Shown piece by piece: positions 17,263 to 27,055 of a stretch of DNA of 64,000 bases. The notes below the pieces were generated by a model. That model did not search any database and was not told where the DNA came from. It was given only the letters and a program-made list of their open reading frames with translations. Location of the stretch: the sequence record PQ182779.1. One strand, 5' to 3'. How positions within the stretch are numbered: position 1 is the first letter of the stretch; every line of letters begins with the position of its first letter. Both the position numbers and the translations under genes were made by a program.

Positions 17263-18531
17263 ATGTCCTTACATGCTTTCCGCGAAGAATCAGTAGAACT
17301 TCTAGCACCTTGGGAAGAAGCAGTCGAAGAAGAAACTAATGCTGAATTATCTTCTCGTACTGCGATTTTTCATGAGCTATTATTGAATTACCCACCGCTT
17401 AATGAAGCATCTCGCGCTAAAAAGTACGAAGAAATTAAAGAATTCCACCGCCTGATTTTTAAAGGACTTTACCCCACTGTAGAACGTATTAGCGAAAACT
17501 TAAATAATCAGGTATTACTAATGCGTTTCTTTCAACTACTTGAAAGGGAAGCGGTACGTATTTATACGTTCATTAACTACGAACGTCCTTTTGGTGACGC
17601 AGTCTTTCAATTTGAAATGGAAGTACTGAAACTTTTCTTGGACAAAATGAATCAGTACGGAATCTATACTGAACCATTTAGCCACAGGAGCTTCTTTATC
17701 TTTCGTGATGATAAAATTGTAGGTGCTTGCCAGATGGAAGATAATGGTAGCCAACAACAATTTTATTACGTTGGTGACTTTTCGATCGGGAAAATCCTCA
17801 AAGATATTTTCAACAGCTTCCAAAATAAAGAGAAGAATATTACTATTCGTCGGCTCTGTTTAACGGGTAACAATGATGTTCAAAGTCAGTATAAAACACT
17901 GAAACAACGGCGCACAGTTACCGATCCAAAAGCCTTTTGGCCCTTCGCACCCAAATCACCTCGTGAGATGGCAGCCGAGTTTGAAGCCAGTGACTCGAAC
18001 GTACTGATTCTGTACGGCGAGCCAGGGTTAGGTAAGAGCCAATATATCGCCGAGATGATCAAGTGGAAAGACGAGAACTCTTACGGTACCGTATTTGTTT
18101 GCGACGATAACCCGGTATTTAAATCCCCACGGTTTACACCTTACGTTCACGACATGCCAAGTAACAGCTGGTTAGTGACTGAAGACGCCCATGAAATGAT
18201 CGAAGCACGTGATATGGGTAACAGTCTGATGGCTGGGATACTGAATGCTGCCGAAGGGATCACTTCTGGTAACGTCAAATTCATTATCTCAACTAACATC
18301 ACGTCGTTAAAAGACGTTGATCATGCCCTGTATCGCCCAGGTCGTACTTTACGCGTCATCCCGTTCAAAGCGTTAACAGCCGATCAAGCCAATGCCGCTC
18401 GCGCTGCGATAGGACATCCTCCGATTGATTTCGGTAACGTGTCCAAACTCAGCTTAGCGGAAGCATTAAACTGGGAAGCGTATCAGGCGCTGCAAAGCGA
18501 GATCAAACAGGGCGGCTTTATCGGCCGTTAA
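17263..18531 (+). CDS. AAA+ ATPase (paralog 1)
   Basis: Walker A GEPGLGKS, Walker B-like WLVTED, sensor STN, DHALYRPGR arginine finger. Confidence 0.85.
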   Translation: MSLHAFREESVELLAPWEEAVEEETNAELSSRTAIFHELLLNYPPLNEASRAKKYEEIKEFHRLIFKGLYPTVERISENLNNQVLLMRFFQLLEREAVRIYTFINYERPFGDAVFQFEMEVLKLFLDKMNQYGIYTEPFSHRSFFIFRDDKIVGACQMEDNGSQQQFYYVGDFSIGKILKDIFNSFQNKEKNITIRRLCLTGNNDVQSQYKTLKQRRTVTDPKAFWPFAPKSPREMAAEFEASDSNVLILYGEPGLGKSQYIAEMIKWKDENSYGTVFVCDDNPVFKSPRFTPYVHDMPSNSWLVTEDAHEMIEARDMGNSLMAGILNAAEGITSGNVKFIISTNITSLKDVDHALYRPGRTLRVIPFKALTADQANAARAAIGHPPIDFGNVSKLSLAEALNWEAYQALQSEIKQGGFIGR

Positions 18532-19059: not shown

Positions 19060-20229
19060 ATGGCTAATGAAAGTAAAAACAATGTTTTGACTAAAGATTT
19101 TACGTCAAATGCACGCGCCGATTCAGGTAAGCTCAAAGAAGAAATGATGGAATTTTTCGATATTTACTGCCGGATAAATGTTGAAGGTCGAAGTAACGGC
19201 GACCCTGTTAAAAAGGCGATCAAAATTTTCTTGGGGGTCAATAATCGCCCTATGGGTTTCTCAAGGAAAGGGTTTTGGTTAACAGGGAATGCACGCGACT
19301 TAGGGAAAAGTGTTGAGGAACTGCTTTCCAATCAGTTACGTAATTACTTCTCGAAATTCGACACTTTTGTTTACACCGAAATTATTCCTGGGGCATTCCT
19401 TCTCGCTAACCTACGAGGAGAGATTGTAGGGATGCTCTATTTTGGGTCTGGTGTCTCAGAAAACTTTGTATTCTGTTACGGGCCTGACGATCTCTGCCAA
19501 GGGTTCGGGGAAATCATCAGTACGTTCTTCACGGCCCGCTTACCGGAAACGGTTTCTCGTTTGTCGCTGAATGCTGGCGGTAATGTCGTTGCGCGGAACA
19601 AACGACTGCAAGATAAAAATGAGATAAAAGACTTTAAGGGATTCTGGCCTTATTTCTCATTATCCCCTGCGGAATTGGCGGAAGCGTTTGATAATTCAAA
19701 CAACAATGTTTTAGTCCTTTACGGTGCACCAGGGTTAGGTAAGAGCCAGTTCATTCGTGAAATGATACGGTGGAAAAATGAACAAAAAAATGATAACGTC
19801 GTTGTAGCGGATACTGCGGACGTACTCAATTCGCCATCTATTGTTCCGTATATCCATGATTTGGATGACGGTACTTGGCTCGTCACCGAAGACCAGCTAG
19901 TTATGTTGGAGCGTCGCGAAAACGGTAATAGCTTAATGTCCGGTTTATTAAACGCCGCAGAGGGGATCACTTCCGGTAATGTCAAGTTCATTATCTCAAC
20001 TAACTTACTTAACCTCAAGTCAGTCGATAATGCAATTATTCGCCCCGGCCGTTTGTTTAAAGCCCTGTCATTCAGAACGTTAAATGAAACCGAAGCTGCG
20101 AAGGCGCGGAGCGCGGTTGATCTCGAACCGGTAGATTTCGCTGGTCGTGAGAAAATCACGTTGGCGGAAGCATTAAACTGGGAGACCTTCATCGAAACTG
20201 AAAGTATGATCAAAACAAGTTTTATTTAA
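19060..20229 (+). CDS. AAA+ ATPase (paralog 2)
   Basis: Walker A GAPGLGKS, WLVTED, LNAAEGITSGNVKFIISTN shared with paralog 1, IIRPGR. Confidence 0.85.
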   Translation: MANESKNNVLTKDFTSNARADSGKLKEEMMEFFDIYCRINVEGRSNGDPVKKAIKIFLGVNNRPMGFSRKGFWLTGNARDLGKSVEELLSNQLRNYFSKFDTFVYTEIIPGAFLLANLRGEIVGMLYFGSGVSENFVFCYGPDDLCQGFGEIISTFFTARLPETVSRLSLNAGGNVVARNKRLQDKNEIKDFKGFWPYFSLSPAELAEAFDNSNNNVLVLYGAPGLGKSQFIREMIRWKNEQKNDNVVVADTADVLNSPSIVPYIHDLDDGTWLVTEDQLVMLERRENGNSLMSGLLNAAEGITSGNVKFIISTNLLNLKSVDNAIIRPGRLFKALSFRTLNETEAAKARSAVDLEPVDFAGREKITLAEALNWETFIETESMIKTSFI

Positions 20230-21748: not shown

Positions 21749-22516
21749 ATGGCTAAGTTACACGAAGTATTGGCAGCAGAACCCACTCGCACCAAACAAG
21801 TGCAAGTCCTGATCGAAGACGCCAGTAAAAAATTCAATAAATCGGCTGAATATTTCAGCGGGTTTGATAAAACCCTGAAACTGCACGAAGACAACGACGC
21901 CAACGCCGCGATCGAAAAAAGCGAAAGTACCAGCAAGGCAGTGATCACCACTGTTGCCGAAACGCTGCAGTACCTCTTCGAATATTTCGCCACCGCAGAA
22001 GACCTTCGCCTGCAAAAAGCCCTGACCAATCAGGTAGCGAAAGCAGACATCATGTTCAAAGGCGAAGTCCTCGTTTCTGGAGTGCCGGTAGATGAACTCC
22101 TTGGCCTGGAAAAACGCCTGGCGGAACTGCGCAAACTGATCGCCGCTGCCCCTACTCTGGATTCGTCCAAACAATGGGAACGCGATAGCAACAGCACCTA
22201 CGGATTCCGTACCGTGACGGACGAAGTCACGACGAAAACCGAGAAAGTGCTCACTCCGGTTATCCTGGCGCCGGCTACCGACCACCACCCTGCACAGGTG
22301 AAAGAATCGGAAAGTACCGTCGTAATCGGTAGCTTCACCCGTAAAAGCTATTCCGGCGCCTGCACCCCGATGCAGAAAGCCAACGCACTGCGTGATATCG
22401 ACGAACTGATCGTTGAAGTCACTAATGCACGTATGCGTGCAAACTGCACCGAAGTTGTTCAGGGTTCTATCGGCGAAGTACTGACCAACGTGATTCTGAA
22501 AAACTTCACTGCTTAA
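21749..22516 (+). CDS. Conserved ~255-aa coiled-coil protein of unknown function (MAKLxxxxA... family, recalled as DUF7873-like)
   Basis: RBS TAAGGA; strongly C-ending codon usage suggesting high expression; motifs VPVDELLGLEK and PATDHHPAQV resemble a widespread phage/bacterial family. Confidence 0.7.
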   Translation: MAKLHEVLAAEPTRTKQVQVLIEDASKKFNKSAEYFSGFDKTLKLHEDNDANAAIEKSESTSKAVITTVAETLQYLFEYFATAEDLRLQKALTNQVAKADIMFKGEVLVSGVPVDELLGLEKRLAELRKLIAAAPTLDSSKQWERDSNSTYGFRTVTDEVTTKTEKVLTPVILAPATDHHPAQVKESESTVVIGSFTRKSYSGACTPMQKANALRDIDELIVEVTNARMRANCTEVVQGSIGEVLTNVILKNFTA

Positions 22517-22605
22517 TGTGTTAGTAATGGGTATTCTCACGAGTACCCATTGATAATAAAGATTGAGGCCAACCTTATCTTTATTGTTAGTCCGTGTTGC
22601 AGGTG

Positions 22606-22686
22606 TGATGACCCCACTGGAAGTTCGACTCTTTCTTCTCCCACCAAACTATGGGAGAATGGCGGAATTGGTAGACGCAGTCATCA
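22606..22686 (+). ncRNA. Circularly permuted tRNA-like RNA 1 (YrlA/Y-RNA-like topology)
   Basis: TGATGAC/GTCATCA closing stem; T-arm GGAAG-TTCGACT-CTTTC; acceptor TTCTCCC-A-CCA...GGGAGAA; D-arm GCG-GAATTGGTAGA-CGC, in the order T, acceptor, D. Confidence 0.75.
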
Positions 22687-22760
22687 ATGCACCCATAATG
22701 CTACTCGGATGGTTAGTGTTAACTTTATCTTATCGCCTCACACGCTTAAAGATAAAGAGT

Positions 22761-22957
22761 AGACAGTAAAATAGCGGACTGAACTTTCTTTCTTTTACGG
22801 AAAGAATTCTAGAGGTCGCGGATTCGAATTCCGCTCTGCCTACCTGGACACATTCACAGAGTGTTTCTTGGAGGCAGATAGCTCAGCCGGTAGAGCACTA
22901 GATTATAAAATAAAACTTCCAATCTTATTCTTAGATAGGTCGCGCTAAATTCTGTTT
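22761..22957 (+). ncRNA. Circularly permuted tRNA-like RNA 2 with long bulged terminal stem
   Basis: TCTAG/CTAGA stem; T-arm GCGGA-TTCGAAT-TCCGC; acceptor TCTGCCT/AGGCAGA closed by a hairpin; D-arm GCTC-AGCCGGTA-GAGC; ends pair AGACAG/CTGTTT and TAGCG-GACT/GGTC-G-CGCTA. Confidence 0.75.
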
Positions 22958-23068
22958 ATAGCTGAATGGCTATGGGCGGTGTTGGGGATGGTTATATCCT
23001 TACCTCCGCCCTTCTTACCACAAAAGTTTCTTTTTCAAAGAGATCACTTTTTGATAAATAAATTATTC

Positions 23069-23107
23069 GAGAGAGGAGGGAATTCCCTCCTCTCTCCTAT
23101 GCTTTTT
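23069..23107 (+). terminator. Terminator-like hairpin closing the protein + RNA unit
   Basis: GAGAGAGGAGGG-AATT-CCCTCCTCTCTC then CTATGCTTTTTT. Confidence 0.75.
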
Positions 23108-23155
23108 TACGGTAAACTGTTTTAATGTAGAAGACACTTTTTAATTGAGGAATTT

Positions 23156-24043
23156 ATGGATAACTCAACCGTTGTCATTATTTTGACGTTGAGCCATAGG
23201 CTCCGTAAATCAATGACTACACTGGCTAATGAGAATAGCGATTGGATGATTCTCTCCCATTGTCTATTGGAATGGTCGGTGCAACAATTTGTTTCACGTA
23301 AACCGGTAGAATTGATCCCTATCTTCAAAGATCTCTACGAACGCTTTCTCAAAGAGCACGAAGAGGAATTCTTTAAGGTTCGGATGGGTTACGGGTTACA
23401 AAAAGCAGAATGGAAAGACGACACGGTTTGGTTACACTTTGCAAATCGTGACCCTAAACATTTCCCGGATTGGACTATTATTAACGGATTGAAGATTCCC
23501 GACGTTAATGATAAGACGATAGAGGGTGTTGTAGTTTATCATCCGAAAGACTCCGCGGTGTATTATAGTGAAGTCAGTCGAATGCCAAGGCACGCAGTAG
23601 TACAAACAGAAGAATTTCTTCGCCTGGGTATCCACAGTAGCAAAGTCCTTCAGAACGCTTTTGATGCTACCCCTATCAATTTACTGGCGTCACGATTCTT
23701 GTTAGTGAATGACCATGAGAAATGCTGGGCAGTTTCAAAAGGTTTCTCTATGTGGTGGAAAGACACTCGTCAAGGTTACCCTACGGTTACTGAAGATCAG
23801 AGCGACGACTACGGACAGGAAAGAAAAACCAAACCGGTTTGGCGTGATAAATTCGCCGAGTCTCGTCAGAAGCCAAAAAGTAAAAATCCGAATAACCCTG
23901 ATTACAAGCGAAGAGTGAAAGTAGGTAAGAAAGAGTACCAAAACGCTTTCAAATGCTCTCAGGGAGAATCTATTCAACCAAGAGAAGTTTACGCCCGTTG
24001 CTATTCTAAACGACCAGAATGGGCAGAGTGGAACTTTATTTAA
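23156..24043 (+). CDS. Hypothetical protein with basic C-terminus
   Basis: 295 aa, RBS GAGGA. Confidence 0.7.
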   Translation: MDNSTVVIILTLSHRLRKSMTTLANENSDWMILSHCLLEWSVQQFVSRKPVELIPIFKDLYERFLKEHEEEFFKVRMGYGLQKAEWKDDTVWLHFANRDPKHFPDWTIINGLKIPDVNDKTIEGVVVYHPKDSAVYYSEVSRMPRHAVVQTEEFLRLGIHSSKVLQNAFDATPINLLASRFLLVNDHEKCWAVSKGFSMWWKDTRQGYPTVTEDQSDDYGQERKTKPVWRDKFAESRQKPKSKNPNNPDYKRRVKVGKKEYQNAFKCSQGESIQPREVYARCYSKRPEWAEWNFI

Positions 24044-26954: not shown

Positions 26955-27055
26955 GTTCTCGTAGCTCAACTAGGTAGAGCGCCTGCATCGGCGGCCACTG
27001 CGCCGCCCACTGCTTAGCAGGAGGTTGCCGGTTCAAATCCGGAAGGGAACAACCA
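26955..27055 (+). ncRNA. Atypical tRNA body with a 30-nt hairpin insert replacing the anticodon loop
   Basis: D-arm GCTC-AACTAGGTA-GAGC, anticodon stem CCTGC/GCAGG, insert ATC-GGCGGC-CACTGC-GCCGCC-CACTGCTTA, T-loop TTCAAAT, ends ACCA. Confidence 0.75.

What the first reader, a model, noticed from the sequence alone, without database searches (positions are those of the whole stretch)
22761..22957. Circularly permuted tRNA-like element 2 on a bulged terminal helix (Y-RNA-like)
TCTAG (22808-22812), GGTC, perfect T-arm GCGGA-TTCGAAT-TCCGC, acceptor TCTGCCT, A-CC, capping hairpin GGACAC/GTGTTT, AGGCAGA, TA, D-arm GCTC-AGCCGGTA-GAGC, A, CTAGA. The two ends pair as AGACAG/CTGTTT and TAGCG-GACT/GGTC-G-CGCTA with a single-nucleotide bulge, separated from the tRNA domain by pyrimidine- and A-rich linkers. 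A bulged terminal helix plus a tRNA-elbow mimic is the general Y RNA plan. Its sequence is unrelated to element 1, so the shared topology looks selected rather than a recent duplication (inference).
Basis: partly seen in the sequence, partly recalled or inferred. Interest (0 to 1): 0.8.

Follow-up and report, generated by a model that had tools for sequence, protein, structure and literature searches.

The report
Permuted tRNA-like RNA beside DUF7873 gene
The element is a real, conserved tRNA-shaped non-coding RNA gene, published for a related phage as a suppressor tRNA; it belongs to an apparently undescribed family that follows one uncharacterised protein gene (DUF7873) in giant phages and in many bacteria.

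Summary

A covariance model built only from unrelated metagenome sequences hits 22808-22902 at 69 bits. All 21 core pairs covary, and so does the 15:48 tertiary pair.

The Y-RNA reading is only partly right. The architecture is YrlA-like (Rfam YrlA 37.6 bits, threshold 69). The Ro60-binding motif is absent, and no Ro60/TROVE gene lies within 10 kb.

Instead the RNA sits downstream of a DUF7873 gene (window 21749-22516), on the same strand. The same holds in 33 of 57 and 50 of 64 independently sampled DUF7873 loci from phages and bacteria.

The acceptor arm carries N-CC(A/U) followed by the hairpin that caps two-piece tmRNA genes. This suggests cleavage into a nicked tRNA mimic with a free CCA end.

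The published "suppressor tRNA-Sup-TTA" annotation is an artefact. Function and protein partner remain inferred.

The parts
21749..22516 (+). DUF7873 (Pfam PF25283) gene, 255 aa; candidate protein partner of the RNAs
   Evidence: Pfam tag on homologs and on this gene. AlphaFold2 model has pLDDT 87.9, with no Foldseek match at E<=1e-3 in PDB or BFVD. The RNA lies downstream on the same strand in 33 of 57 and 50 of 64 sampled loci.
22590..22710 (+). Element 1: a second permuted tRNA-like RNA. Core 22608-22684: T arm GGAAG/CTTTC, acceptor TTCTCCC-A-CCA...GGGAGAA, and a tRNA-Leu-like D arm GCGG AATTGGTA GACGC. Terminal helix GTCCG/CGGAU.
   Evidence: Sequence, fold, scanner, R2 37.8 bits. Conserved with compensatory changes in L021 and L023.
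22761..22766 (+). Outer terminal helix, 5' strand AGACAG
   Evidence: Pairs with 22952-22957. G22762A in relatives turns G.U into A-U.
22772..22780 (+). Bulged helix, 5' strand TAGCGGACT
   Evidence: Pairs with 22938-22947. RNAalifold recovers the helix on a MAFFT alignment of phage and Burkholderiales homologs, with compensatory changes.
22786..22806 (+). Conserved 7-bp hairpin in the 5' arm (TTCTTTC / loop TTTTACG / GAAAGAA). ARAGORN and tRNAscan read it as an anticodon arm.
   Evidence: all six predicted pairs carry both-sides changes across homologs. The loop is 4-7 nt in homologs, so it is not an anticodon loop.
22808..22902 (+). Permuted tRNA-like core: AC-stem 3' strand, variable loop, T arm, 7-bp acceptor arm with A-CC-U and cap hairpin, U8/A9, D arm, AC-stem 5' strand
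   Evidence: R2 69.1 bits, E 2e-19. Rfam YrlA 37.6 bits. All 21 pairs covary. Levitt pair is G15:C48 or A15:U48.
22842..22871 (+). Discriminator A, CC, U and the cap hairpin (loop region AUUCACAGAGUGU) closing the acceptor arm; resembles the intervening sequence of two-piece tmRNA genes
   Evidence: Partial beta_tmRNA match, 24.8 bits. Side-by-side comparison with phage permuted tmRNAs. N73-CC in 22 of 31 family members. R2 consensus.
22919..22939 (+). Conserved motif in the 3' arm, CCAATCTTATTCTTAGATAGG
   Evidence: Alignable between Klebsiella phages, L021 and Burkholderiales loci.
22938..22947 (+). Bulged helix, 3' strand GGTC-G-CGCTA; bulged G22942
   Evidence: The bulged G is the same in all 8 aligned sequences; its flanking C residues in all, and the other neighbours (T before, G after) in all but L021.
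22952..22957 (+). Outer terminal helix, 3' strand CTGTTT
22974..23011 (+). Third conserved hairpin (GGGCGG...CCGCCC) after element 2
   Evidence: Changes on both arms in FBKp24 and Centimanus; their pairing was judged by eye, not counted. A similar hairpin follows element 2 in L021 and L023.
23069..23106 (+). Intrinsic terminator closing the RNA cluster (12-bp stem, then a T run)

Best explanation
Element 2 is a gene for a structured non-coding RNA of about 200 nt, a circularly permuted tRNA mimic. The T arm, a 7-bp acceptor arm and the D arm form a tRNA-like core with tRNA's tertiary-contact bases. In place of an anticodon loop, the anticodon stem continues into a long stem formed by the RNA's 5' and 3' ends. 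That stem has a side hairpin, a conserved 3' motif and one bulged G.

It belongs to a family I could not find described. The family lies 30-950 nt downstream of DUF7873 genes, on the same strand, in jumbo phages and in many bacteria. It is often paired with a second tRNA-like RNA or a tRNA. This much is shown.

Inferred mechanism:
1. The RNAs are transcribed after DUF7873 and end at the terminator at 23069.
2. The acceptor arm carries N73-CC(A/U) and the same cap hairpin that is removed from two-piece tmRNA precursors. tRNA-processing enzymes (RNase P, 3' trimming, CCA addition) therefore probably open the cap. The product would be a nicked, two-piece tRNA-like RNA with a free CCA end, held together by the acceptor, anticodon and terminal stems (about 0.4).
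3. The bulged stem and the conserved 3' motif are the docking platform for a protein, with DUF7873 the prime candidate (about 0.4).
4. The tRNA-shaped end then engages some tRNA-recognising machinery. This would parallel Ro60-Y RNA or SmpB-tmRNA without being either.
For: Structure:
- The fold matches the description.
- Independent model R2 gives 69.1 bits.
- 96.9% and 96.7% of cells are paired, and all 21 pairs carry both-sides changes. Covariation scores are 0.93 and 0.98, against 0.24-0.25 in shuffles (0 of 500 reach the observed value) and at most 0.22 for slid controls.
- RNAalifold on a plain MAFFT alignment recovers the terminal bulged helix, the side hairpin and the cap.
- The Levitt pair is G15:C48 in 57 sequences and A15:U48 in 22.

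Linkage to DUF7873:
- 33 of 57 genome and phage loci and 50 of 64 metagenome loci.
- Every sampled locus whose protein is at least 34% identical to the window's has the element.
- In a pattern search starting from the RNA, the two best-scoring hits have DUF7873 immediately upstream.
- The Burkholderiaceae locus L023 has unrelated neighbours, so the module there is the gene plus its RNAs.

Processing:
- N-CC follows the acceptor in 22 of 31 members, and C74 in 31 of 31.
- The cap is shared with phage and betaproteobacterial permuted tmRNAs.
- Transcripts of permuted tmRNA genes are cleaved by tRNA-processing enzymes, and their CCA is not always encoded.
- M. smegmatis YrlA, which has a 7-bp acceptor stem, is cleaved by RNase P and receives CCA.
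Against: - No expression, end-mapping or binding data were available. Transcription itself is inferred.
- DUF7873 is near-neutral (pI 5.2-8.8) and has no recognisable RNA-binding fold.
- 24 of 57 genome loci, all in the Cytophagales-type clade, lack the RNA.
- In the precursor, CC is paired with GG. From established knowledge of bacterial RNase P, such pairing tends to disfavour cleavage.
- The discriminator base and the acceptor sequence vary freely. No aminoacylation identity is conserved.
- Alignments A5 and A7 were fitted to the model, which inflates pair counts.
Confidence: 0.6

Rival explanations
1. A true YrlA-type Y RNA. Its stem binds a Ro60/Rsr protein from the phage or the host, and the tRNA-like domain tethers an effector such as PNPase.
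For: Same modular plan. YrlA is the best Rfam match (37.6 bits, E 2e-6 in a 1-kb search; 32-42 bits in relatives). tRNA-like tertiary bases and Levitt-pair covariation match what was reported for YrlA. The relative FBKp24 encodes RtcB and an RNA 2'-phosphotransferase elsewhere in its genome; RtcB is a gene class linked to rsr in Salmonella.
Against: - The score is below the gathering score of 69.
- The GNCGAAN0-1G motif is absent.
- No TROVE domain lies within +/-10 kb here, nor in 7 other loci.
- None is annotated in FBKp24.
- The 563-aa neighbour of FBKp24's RtcB has no PDB, PHROG or Pfam match.
- Only a small subset of jumbo phages carry TROVE.
- The conserved neighbour is DUF7873.
Confidence: 0.08
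2. An ochre suppressor tRNA (tRNA-Sup-TTA) spanning 22761-22844, as annotated in GenBank relatives and discussed in the phiKp24 genome paper.
For: ARAGORN calls tRNA-Stop(tta) at 22761-22844. tRNAscan called it in FBKp24.
Against: - Rfam's tRNA model does not reach 29 bits there, while ten other tRNA matches in the window score 39-73 bits.
- That reading needs an acceptor stem with 2 mismatches in 7, has no D arm, and puts C at position 37 (sequence).
- It borrows the T arm of the permuted fold, which has perfect stems.
- In homologs the supposed anticodon hairpin has loops of 4-7 nt with unrelated sequence, and ARAGORN calls no tRNA there.
Confidence: 0.02
3. A permuted tRNA gene that matures into a canonical tRNA. 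The ends would be cut and ligated (for example by the phage RtcB) into a circle, and the acceptor arm then opened, as in red-algal permuted tRNAs.
For: Gene order and the N-CCA feature fit. UUAUAAA follows the anticodon-stem 5' strand (22903-22909) and looks like an anticodon loop. The related phage FBKp24 encodes RtcB and Tpt1.
Against: - The sequence next to the anticodon stem is not conserved as a 7-nt loop in homologs.
- The stem beyond it, its bulge and its 3' motif are conserved, which is unexpected for discarded flanks.
- No splicing endonuclease of the kind that excises and circularises permuted pre-tRNAs in eukaryotes and archaea has been reported in bacteria.
- Burkholderiaceae locus L023 carries the module with no ligase gene nearby.
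Confidence: 0.05
4. A tag-less two-piece tmRNA relative that enters ribosomes, or blocks trans-translation.
For: Permuted order and a nearly identical cap hairpin. There is a partial beta_tmRNA match (35 bits in L023). A CDS-less tmRNA-like RNA from a mycobacteriophage is reported to inhibit the host tmRNA.
Against: - No tmRNA_permuted (RF04321) match even at E<=10, and beta_tmRNA reaches only 24.8 of 84 bits.
- ARAGORN finds no tmRNA.
- Position 3:70 is G-C, not G.U.
- A full D arm and an anticodon stem are present; the permuted tmRNAs compared here show no D arm.
- Close relatives differ by a 2-nt indel and by loss of the only in-frame stop in the would-be coding stretch.
Confidence: 0.05
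5. A decoy or sponge for a host tRNA-targeting defence nuclease or tRNA-modifying enzyme. This is a functional reading compatible with the best structural explanation.
For: It lies in the phage tRNA region. In L080 the module follows a CCA-adding-type enzyme and an RNA ligase. FBKp24 annotators noted a WapA-like tRNA nuclease about 6 kb upstream.
Against: It has no anticodon loop, so it cannot bait anticodon nucleases. The module also occurs in at least one Burkholderiaceae chromosomal locus whose neighbours are ordinary bacterial genes. No PADLOC match for the neighbouring proteins.
Confidence: 0.15

Closest known systems
YrlA (Rfam RF02553), the tRNA-mimicking bacterial Y RNA bound by Ro60/Rsr
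   Same: - tRNA-like domain in the order variable loop, T arm, closed acceptor stem-loop, D arm.
- The anticodon stem is formed by the two ends and continues into a long stem.
- tRNA tertiary bases, including a covarying Levitt pair.
- Encoded just downstream of a protein gene, sometimes in pairs (rsr-yrlB-yrlA).
   Different: - Score is half the family threshold.
- No GNCGAA Ro60 motif and no TROVE gene nearby; the neighbour is DUF7873.
- The acceptor is 7 bp followed by N-CC(A/U) and a tmRNA-type cap. Salmonella YrlA has a 6-bp acceptor stem and no free CCA end.
- An extra side hairpin and a conserved 3' motif.
Two-piece (circularly permuted) tmRNA genes (Rfam RF04321, RF01850), including phage-encoded ones
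   Same: - Gene order T arm, acceptor 3' strand, N-CC, intervening hairpin, acceptor 5' strand.
- Cap sequence CC-UAAG...CUUAGG, with shared loop motifs.
- CCA often incompletely encoded.
   Different: - The permuted tmRNAs compared here have G3:U70 and no D arm or anticodon stem, and tmRNA carries a tag reading frame.
- This RNA has a full D arm and a 5-bp anticodon stem, G3-C70 and no reading frame.
- It is not detected by RF04321.
Circularly permuted tRNA genes of Cyanidioschyzon merolae and some archaea
   Same: The 3' half lies upstream of the 5' half. The acceptor arm is closed in the precursor, and the anticodon stem is made by the transcript ends.
   Different: Those precursors yield a normal tRNA through a circular intermediate. 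Here nothing that would restore an anticodon loop is conserved, and the 'flanks' themselves are conserved structure.

Membership tests
YrlA (RF02553) | Reaches the Rfam gathering score (69 bits) | tested here: not met
   37.6 bits at 22802-22929; only the tRNA-like core aligns. Not listed in the gathering-threshold scan.
YrlA (RF02553) | tRNA-like domain in V-T-AS-D order on a stem formed by the 5' and 3' ends | tested here: met
YrlA (RF02553) | tRNA tertiary-contact bases, with a Levitt pair that covaries (G15:C48 or A15:U48) | tested here: met
   A14 in 85 of 87 sequences; G15:C48 in 57 and A15:U48 in 22. U8, G18G19 and the T-loop TTCGAAT are present in the window sequence.
YrlA (RF02553) | GNCGAAN0-1G motif near the 5' end (proposed Ro60 contact) | tested here: not met
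   None in 22517-23155. GNCGAA occurs in 5 of 92 family members, against about 0.08 expected by chance per flank.
YrlA (RF02553) | Encoded within about 4 kb of a TROVE/Ro60 gene, on the same strand | tested here: not met
   No TROVE among Pfam hits within +/-10 kb of the same locus in KpLz-2_45, nor in L021-L024 and L080-L082. The whole phage genome and the host were not searched with a TROVE profile.
YrlA (RF02553) | Binds Ro60/Rsr | not testable with these tools
   Needs pull-down or a gel-shift assay.
tRNA (suppressor tRNA-Sup-TTA) | Passes the Rfam tRNA model (29 bits) with a canonical cloverleaf | tested here: not met
   No RF00005 match at 22761-22844, while ten other matches pass. Acceptor 5 of 7 paired, no D arm, C37.
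tRNA (suppressor tRNA-Sup-TTA) | 7-nt anticodon loop conserved in orthologs | tested here: not met
   The orthologous hairpin has loops of 4-7 nt with unrelated sequence. ARAGORN calls no tRNA there in L021 or L023-L029.
Two-piece tmRNA (RF04321 / RF01850) | Reaches a family gathering score | tested here: not met
   beta_tmRNA 24.8 of 84 bits, model positions 86-150 only. No RF04321 match at E<=10. Genuine phage permuted tmRNAs score 76-121 bits on these models.
Two-piece tmRNA (RF04321 / RF01850) | Permuted order with N-CC and an intervening hairpin between the acceptor strands | tested here: met
Two-piece tmRNA (RF04321 / RF01850) | G3:U70 alanine identity pair and a tag reading frame | tested here: not met
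   G3-C70. A 2-nt indel and loss of the in-frame stop between close relatives. ARAGORN finds no tmRNA.
Circularly permuted tRNA gene | Ends that can be joined to restore a conserved 7-nt anticodon loop | tested here: inconclusive
   UUAUAAA follows the stem in the window, but the equivalent positions are not conserved in homologs. No junction reads were available.
DUF7873-linked permuted tRNA-like RNA (family delimited here) | Matches a covariance model built without the window's clade | tested here: met
   R2 69.1 bits, E 2e-19, top hit in the window.
DUF7873-linked permuted tRNA-like RNA (family delimited here) | Lies downstream of a DUF7873 gene on the same strand | tested here: met
   The gene ends at 22516 and the core starts at 22808. 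Family offsets are 31-948 nt.

The most novel reading that the evidence does not exclude
DUF7873 and its one or two downstream permuted tRNA-like RNAs form a previously unrecognised ribonucleoprotein system. It would be comparable in standing to Ro60-Y RNA or SmpB-tmRNA, and shared by jumbo phages and diverse bacteria. [quoted passage not shown]
Probability: 0.3. Interest if true: 0.9.

Novelty: new variant of a known kind. Interest (0 to 1): 0.75.

Why it matters
- It corrects a published annotation. The 'suppressor tRNA' of Klebsiella jumbo phage phiKp24 and its relatives is not a tRNA.
- It delimits a large, covariation-supported RNA family that Rfam 15 does not capture.
- It gives a first functional lead for a protein family of about 2,300 clusters at 50% identity (DUF7873) that has no known fold or function.
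- The family sits structurally between YrlA Y RNAs and two-piece tmRNAs. It may show how tRNA-derived modules are repeatedly recruited onto protein-binding stems.
- The bacterial and phage versions offer simple systems for finding what machinery a tRNA mimic without an anticodon engages.

Tried and rejected
- **A Ro60 candidate elsewhere in the phage.** All 431 annotated features of relative FBKp24 were read. The 563-aa gene next to its RtcB was tested and gave no PDB, PHROG or Pfam match, so it was dropped. I had no TROVE seed sequence or profile. A genome-wide and host-wide TROVE search was therefore not done.
- **The DUF7873 fold.** Foldseek against PDB and BFVD found nothing at E<=1e-3. 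A profile search of PDB sequences gave nothing better than E 0.3. PADLOC, PHROGs and NCBIfam gave nothing.
- **Distant DNA search of 50,697 phage records.** It found only the 13 close relatives.
- **RNA-side pattern search in viral contigs.** It returned mostly chance hits and genuine phage permuted tmRNAs. This was useful as a control. It also showed that model R1 gives tmRNAs up to 46 bits and tandem tRNAs up to about 52 bits. The counts therefore rest on acceptor complementarity as well as on score.
- **Literature.** No paper mentions DUF7873 or PF25283, or tRNA-like non-coding RNAs in jumbo phages.
- **Promoter scan.** Only weak sigma-70-like matches. The phage has its own RNA polymerases, so this says little.

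Full report
**Source and setting.** The window is part of a roughly 300-kb Klebsiella jumbo phage. It is 100% identical to vB_kp_MJ359 over the tested kilobase. The relatives are KpLz-2_45 (Siatvirus), FBKp24 (Maaswegvirus) and Centimanus. FBKp24 carries a nuclear-shell-like protein, a tubulin and split RNA polymerases.

The finding lies in a 639-nt gap (22517-23155) between two + strand genes, 21749-22516 and 23156-24043. A strong intrinsic terminator sits at 23069-23096. A cluster of ten tRNA genes starts 2.7 kb further on.

**The observation.** The minimum-free-energy fold of 22755-22965 reproduces the plan: outer helix, bulged helix, anticodon-like stem, T arm, acceptor arm with a cap hairpin, and D arm. 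Its z-score is -4.18, and none of 200 shuffles folds as well.

Three details need correcting:
- The 5' 'linker' contains a 7-bp hairpin (22786-22806).
- The cap is a coaxial extension of the acceptor stem. CC 22843-22844 pairs with GG 22870-22871, and A22842 is left out.
- The 3' 'linker' carries a conserved motif.

A strict scanner for the permuted cloverleaf finds only elements 1 and 2 in the window. It finds only those two, plus one dubious hit, in the 307-kb FBKp24 genome.

Among eight related phages the two elements are nearly invariant, while the downstream hairpin and terminator diverge. Every change inside element 2 lies in a loop or linker, or keeps its pair.

**Distant relatives.** The upstream gene is a member of Pfam DUF7873. 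Fetching loci through that protein gave the following:
- A 264-kb phage contig (L021, protein 62% identical) carries both elements. Element 2 there has compensatory changes in each core stem and in the inner part of the bulged helix, and the bulged G is retained.
- A 94-kb viral contig (L018, 37%) has a permuted element with entirely different stem sequences.
- A Burkholderiaceae contig (L023) has unrelated chromosomal neighbours. Both elements follow the gene there.
- The window element and the Burkholderiales elements align over their full length.
- RNAalifold on that plain MAFFT alignment recovers the bulged terminal helix, the side hairpin, the cap extension and the cloverleaf arms. Of 46 predicted pairs, 31 show compensatory changes. 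The bulged G is present in all eight sequences.

**Covariation.** Model R1 was built from 15 cores.
- On 31 hits, 96.9% of cells pair and all 21 pairs show changes on both sides. The covariation score is 0.93, against 0.25 in shuffles and at most 0.18 for slid partners.
- An independent set of 61 metagenome hits gives 96.7% paired and a score of 0.98.
- These two alignments are fitted to the model, so the counts lean its way. The MAFFT and RNAalifold result and the scanner do not share that bias.
- The tertiary Levitt pair switches between G15:C48 (57 sequences) and A15:U48 (22 sequences).
- Model R2 was built from the metagenome set alone. Its best window hit is 22808-22902 at 69.1 bits; element 1 scores 37.8 bits.

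**Linkage to DUF7873.**
- In species-representative genomes and phage contigs, 33 of 57 assessable DUF7873 loci have an element of at least 45 bits, 101-948 nt downstream on the same strand. The 24 loci without one all belong to the Cytophagales-type clade, whose proteins are about 30% identical.
- In a separate metagenome sample, 50 of 64 loci have a structurally sound element 31-699 nt downstream. One locus has it upstream.
- Starting from the RNA, a pattern search of viral contigs gave two high-scoring hits, and both have DUF7873 immediately upstream. The lower-scoring hits are genuine phage permuted tmRNAs or tandem tRNAs.
- DUF7873 is a single-domain protein of about 250 residues, with about 2,300 clusters at 50% identity.
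- Its AlphaFold2 model is confident (pLDDT 87.9) yet matches nothing in PDB or BFVD. It has no defence-system match. No paper in the library mentions it.
- It is not basic, so direct RNA binding is an inference from gene linkage only.

**Comparison with known families.**

*YrlA.* The architecture and the tertiary features are the same, and YrlA is the best Rfam match. Membership fails on three counts: the score (37.6 against 69 bits), the Ro60 motif, and adjacency to a TROVE gene.

*Two-piece tmRNA.* The acceptor arm is 7 bp and is followed by N-CC in 22 of 31 members. It is capped by a hairpin nearly identical to the intervening sequence of phage and betaproteobacterial permuted tmRNA genes. 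Those transcripts are cut by tRNA-processing enzymes, and their CCA is not always encoded. Unlike tmRNA, this RNA has a full D arm and an anticodon stem, G3-C70, and no reading frame. It is not found by the tmRNA_permuted model.

*Suppressor tRNA.* ARAGORN's tRNA-Stop(tta) call was discussed as a suppressor tRNA in the phiKp24 paper. The call reuses the T arm with a mismatched acceptor stem and no D arm. It fails the Rfam tRNA model. Its 'anticodon' hairpin is not conserved as such.

**What is shown and what is inferred.**
- Shown: the structure, its conservation, its family, and its gene linkage.
- Inferred: transcription, opening of the cap to give a free CCA end, binding by DUF7873, and any downstream function.

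The relative FBKp24 encodes RtcB and an RNA 2'-phosphotransferase elsewhere. In L080 the module follows a CCA-adding-type enzyme and an RNA ligase. This places it among tRNA-repair and tRNA genes but proves nothing further.

Noticed in passing
window 22590-22710: Element 1 is a second permuted tRNA-like RNA. Its D arm (GCGG AATTGGTA GACGC) looks to me, from memory, like that of tRNA-Leu; this was not tested. It has discriminator A and an encoded CCA. The pair, a Leu-like element followed by a class I element, recurs in L021, L023, L025, L027-L029, L081 and several metagenome loci. The order is reversed in L037.
   Followed up: partly
window 22974-23011: A third conserved hairpin (GGGCGG...CCGCCC, loop region GGTTATATCC) follows element 2. 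It carries changes on both arms in FBKp24 and Centimanus; that they keep the pairing was judged by eye. A similar hairpin follows in L021 and in Burkholderiales locus L023. FBKp24 annotates a 38-aa ORF over it.
   Followed up: partly
window 22576-22586, 22722-22734, 22919-22931: A pyrimidine-rich motif (CTTATCTTTAT / CTTTATCTTATCG / CCAATCTTATTCT) recurs before element 1, before element 2 and in the 3' arm of element 2. Similar words occur at the same three places in L023. A related word, TATCGCTCCATAGC, precedes the element in Cytophagales-type loci. Its role is unknown.
   Followed up: no
window 22526-22551: An 8-bp hairpin (AATGGGTA...TACCCATT) lies directly after the DUF7873 stop codon and is also present in L021. 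It has no T run, so it is not an obvious terminator.
   Followed up: no
window 26955-27051: Rfam's tRNA model matches a 97-nt stretch (38.9 bits) between tRNA-Gly and tRNA-Asp that ARAGORN does not call. It may be a tRNA with an insert or another tRNA-like gene.
   Followed up: no
L018 5640-5711: In the divergent phage contig the permuted element is followed by a normal-order tRNA-like gene with a 6-nt anticodon loop, which ARAGORN reports as tRNA-???.
   Followed up: no
L036, L038, L039, L044, L053, L056, L060, L062, L064, L065, L068, L071, L073, L074 (about 40-130 nt after the element): In many non-Burkholderiales loci an ARAGORN-called tRNA follows the permuted element on the same strand. 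Its identity varies: Met, Gly, Leu, Ile, Val, Arg.
   Followed up: no
L080 2760-6392: In a 120-kb phage contig the DUF7873-RNA module is preceded by a PolyA_pol/CCA-adding-type enzyme and an RNA ligase (PF09414).
   Followed up: no
L011 23261-26199 (FBKp24 173261-176199): FBKp24's RtcB ligase is followed by a 563-aa orphan protein with no PDB, PHROG or Pfam match. In the window's own clade the ortholog is 442 aa and 48% identical.
   Followed up: partly
L043 3244-4760 (Bernardetia sp. OM2101 chromosome): Here DUF7873 is followed by a terminator-like hairpin and an opposite-strand 457-aa ORF, with no RNA element. All 24 genome loci that lack the RNA belong to this Cytophagales-type clade.
   Followed up: partly
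window 17263-18531 and 19060-20229: Two paralogous ATPase-like genes (phrog_14322; annotated as AAA-domain proteins in FBKp24) lie upstream of the module. A gene that FBKp24 annotators called a WapA-like tRNA nuclease lies nearby.
   Followed up: no
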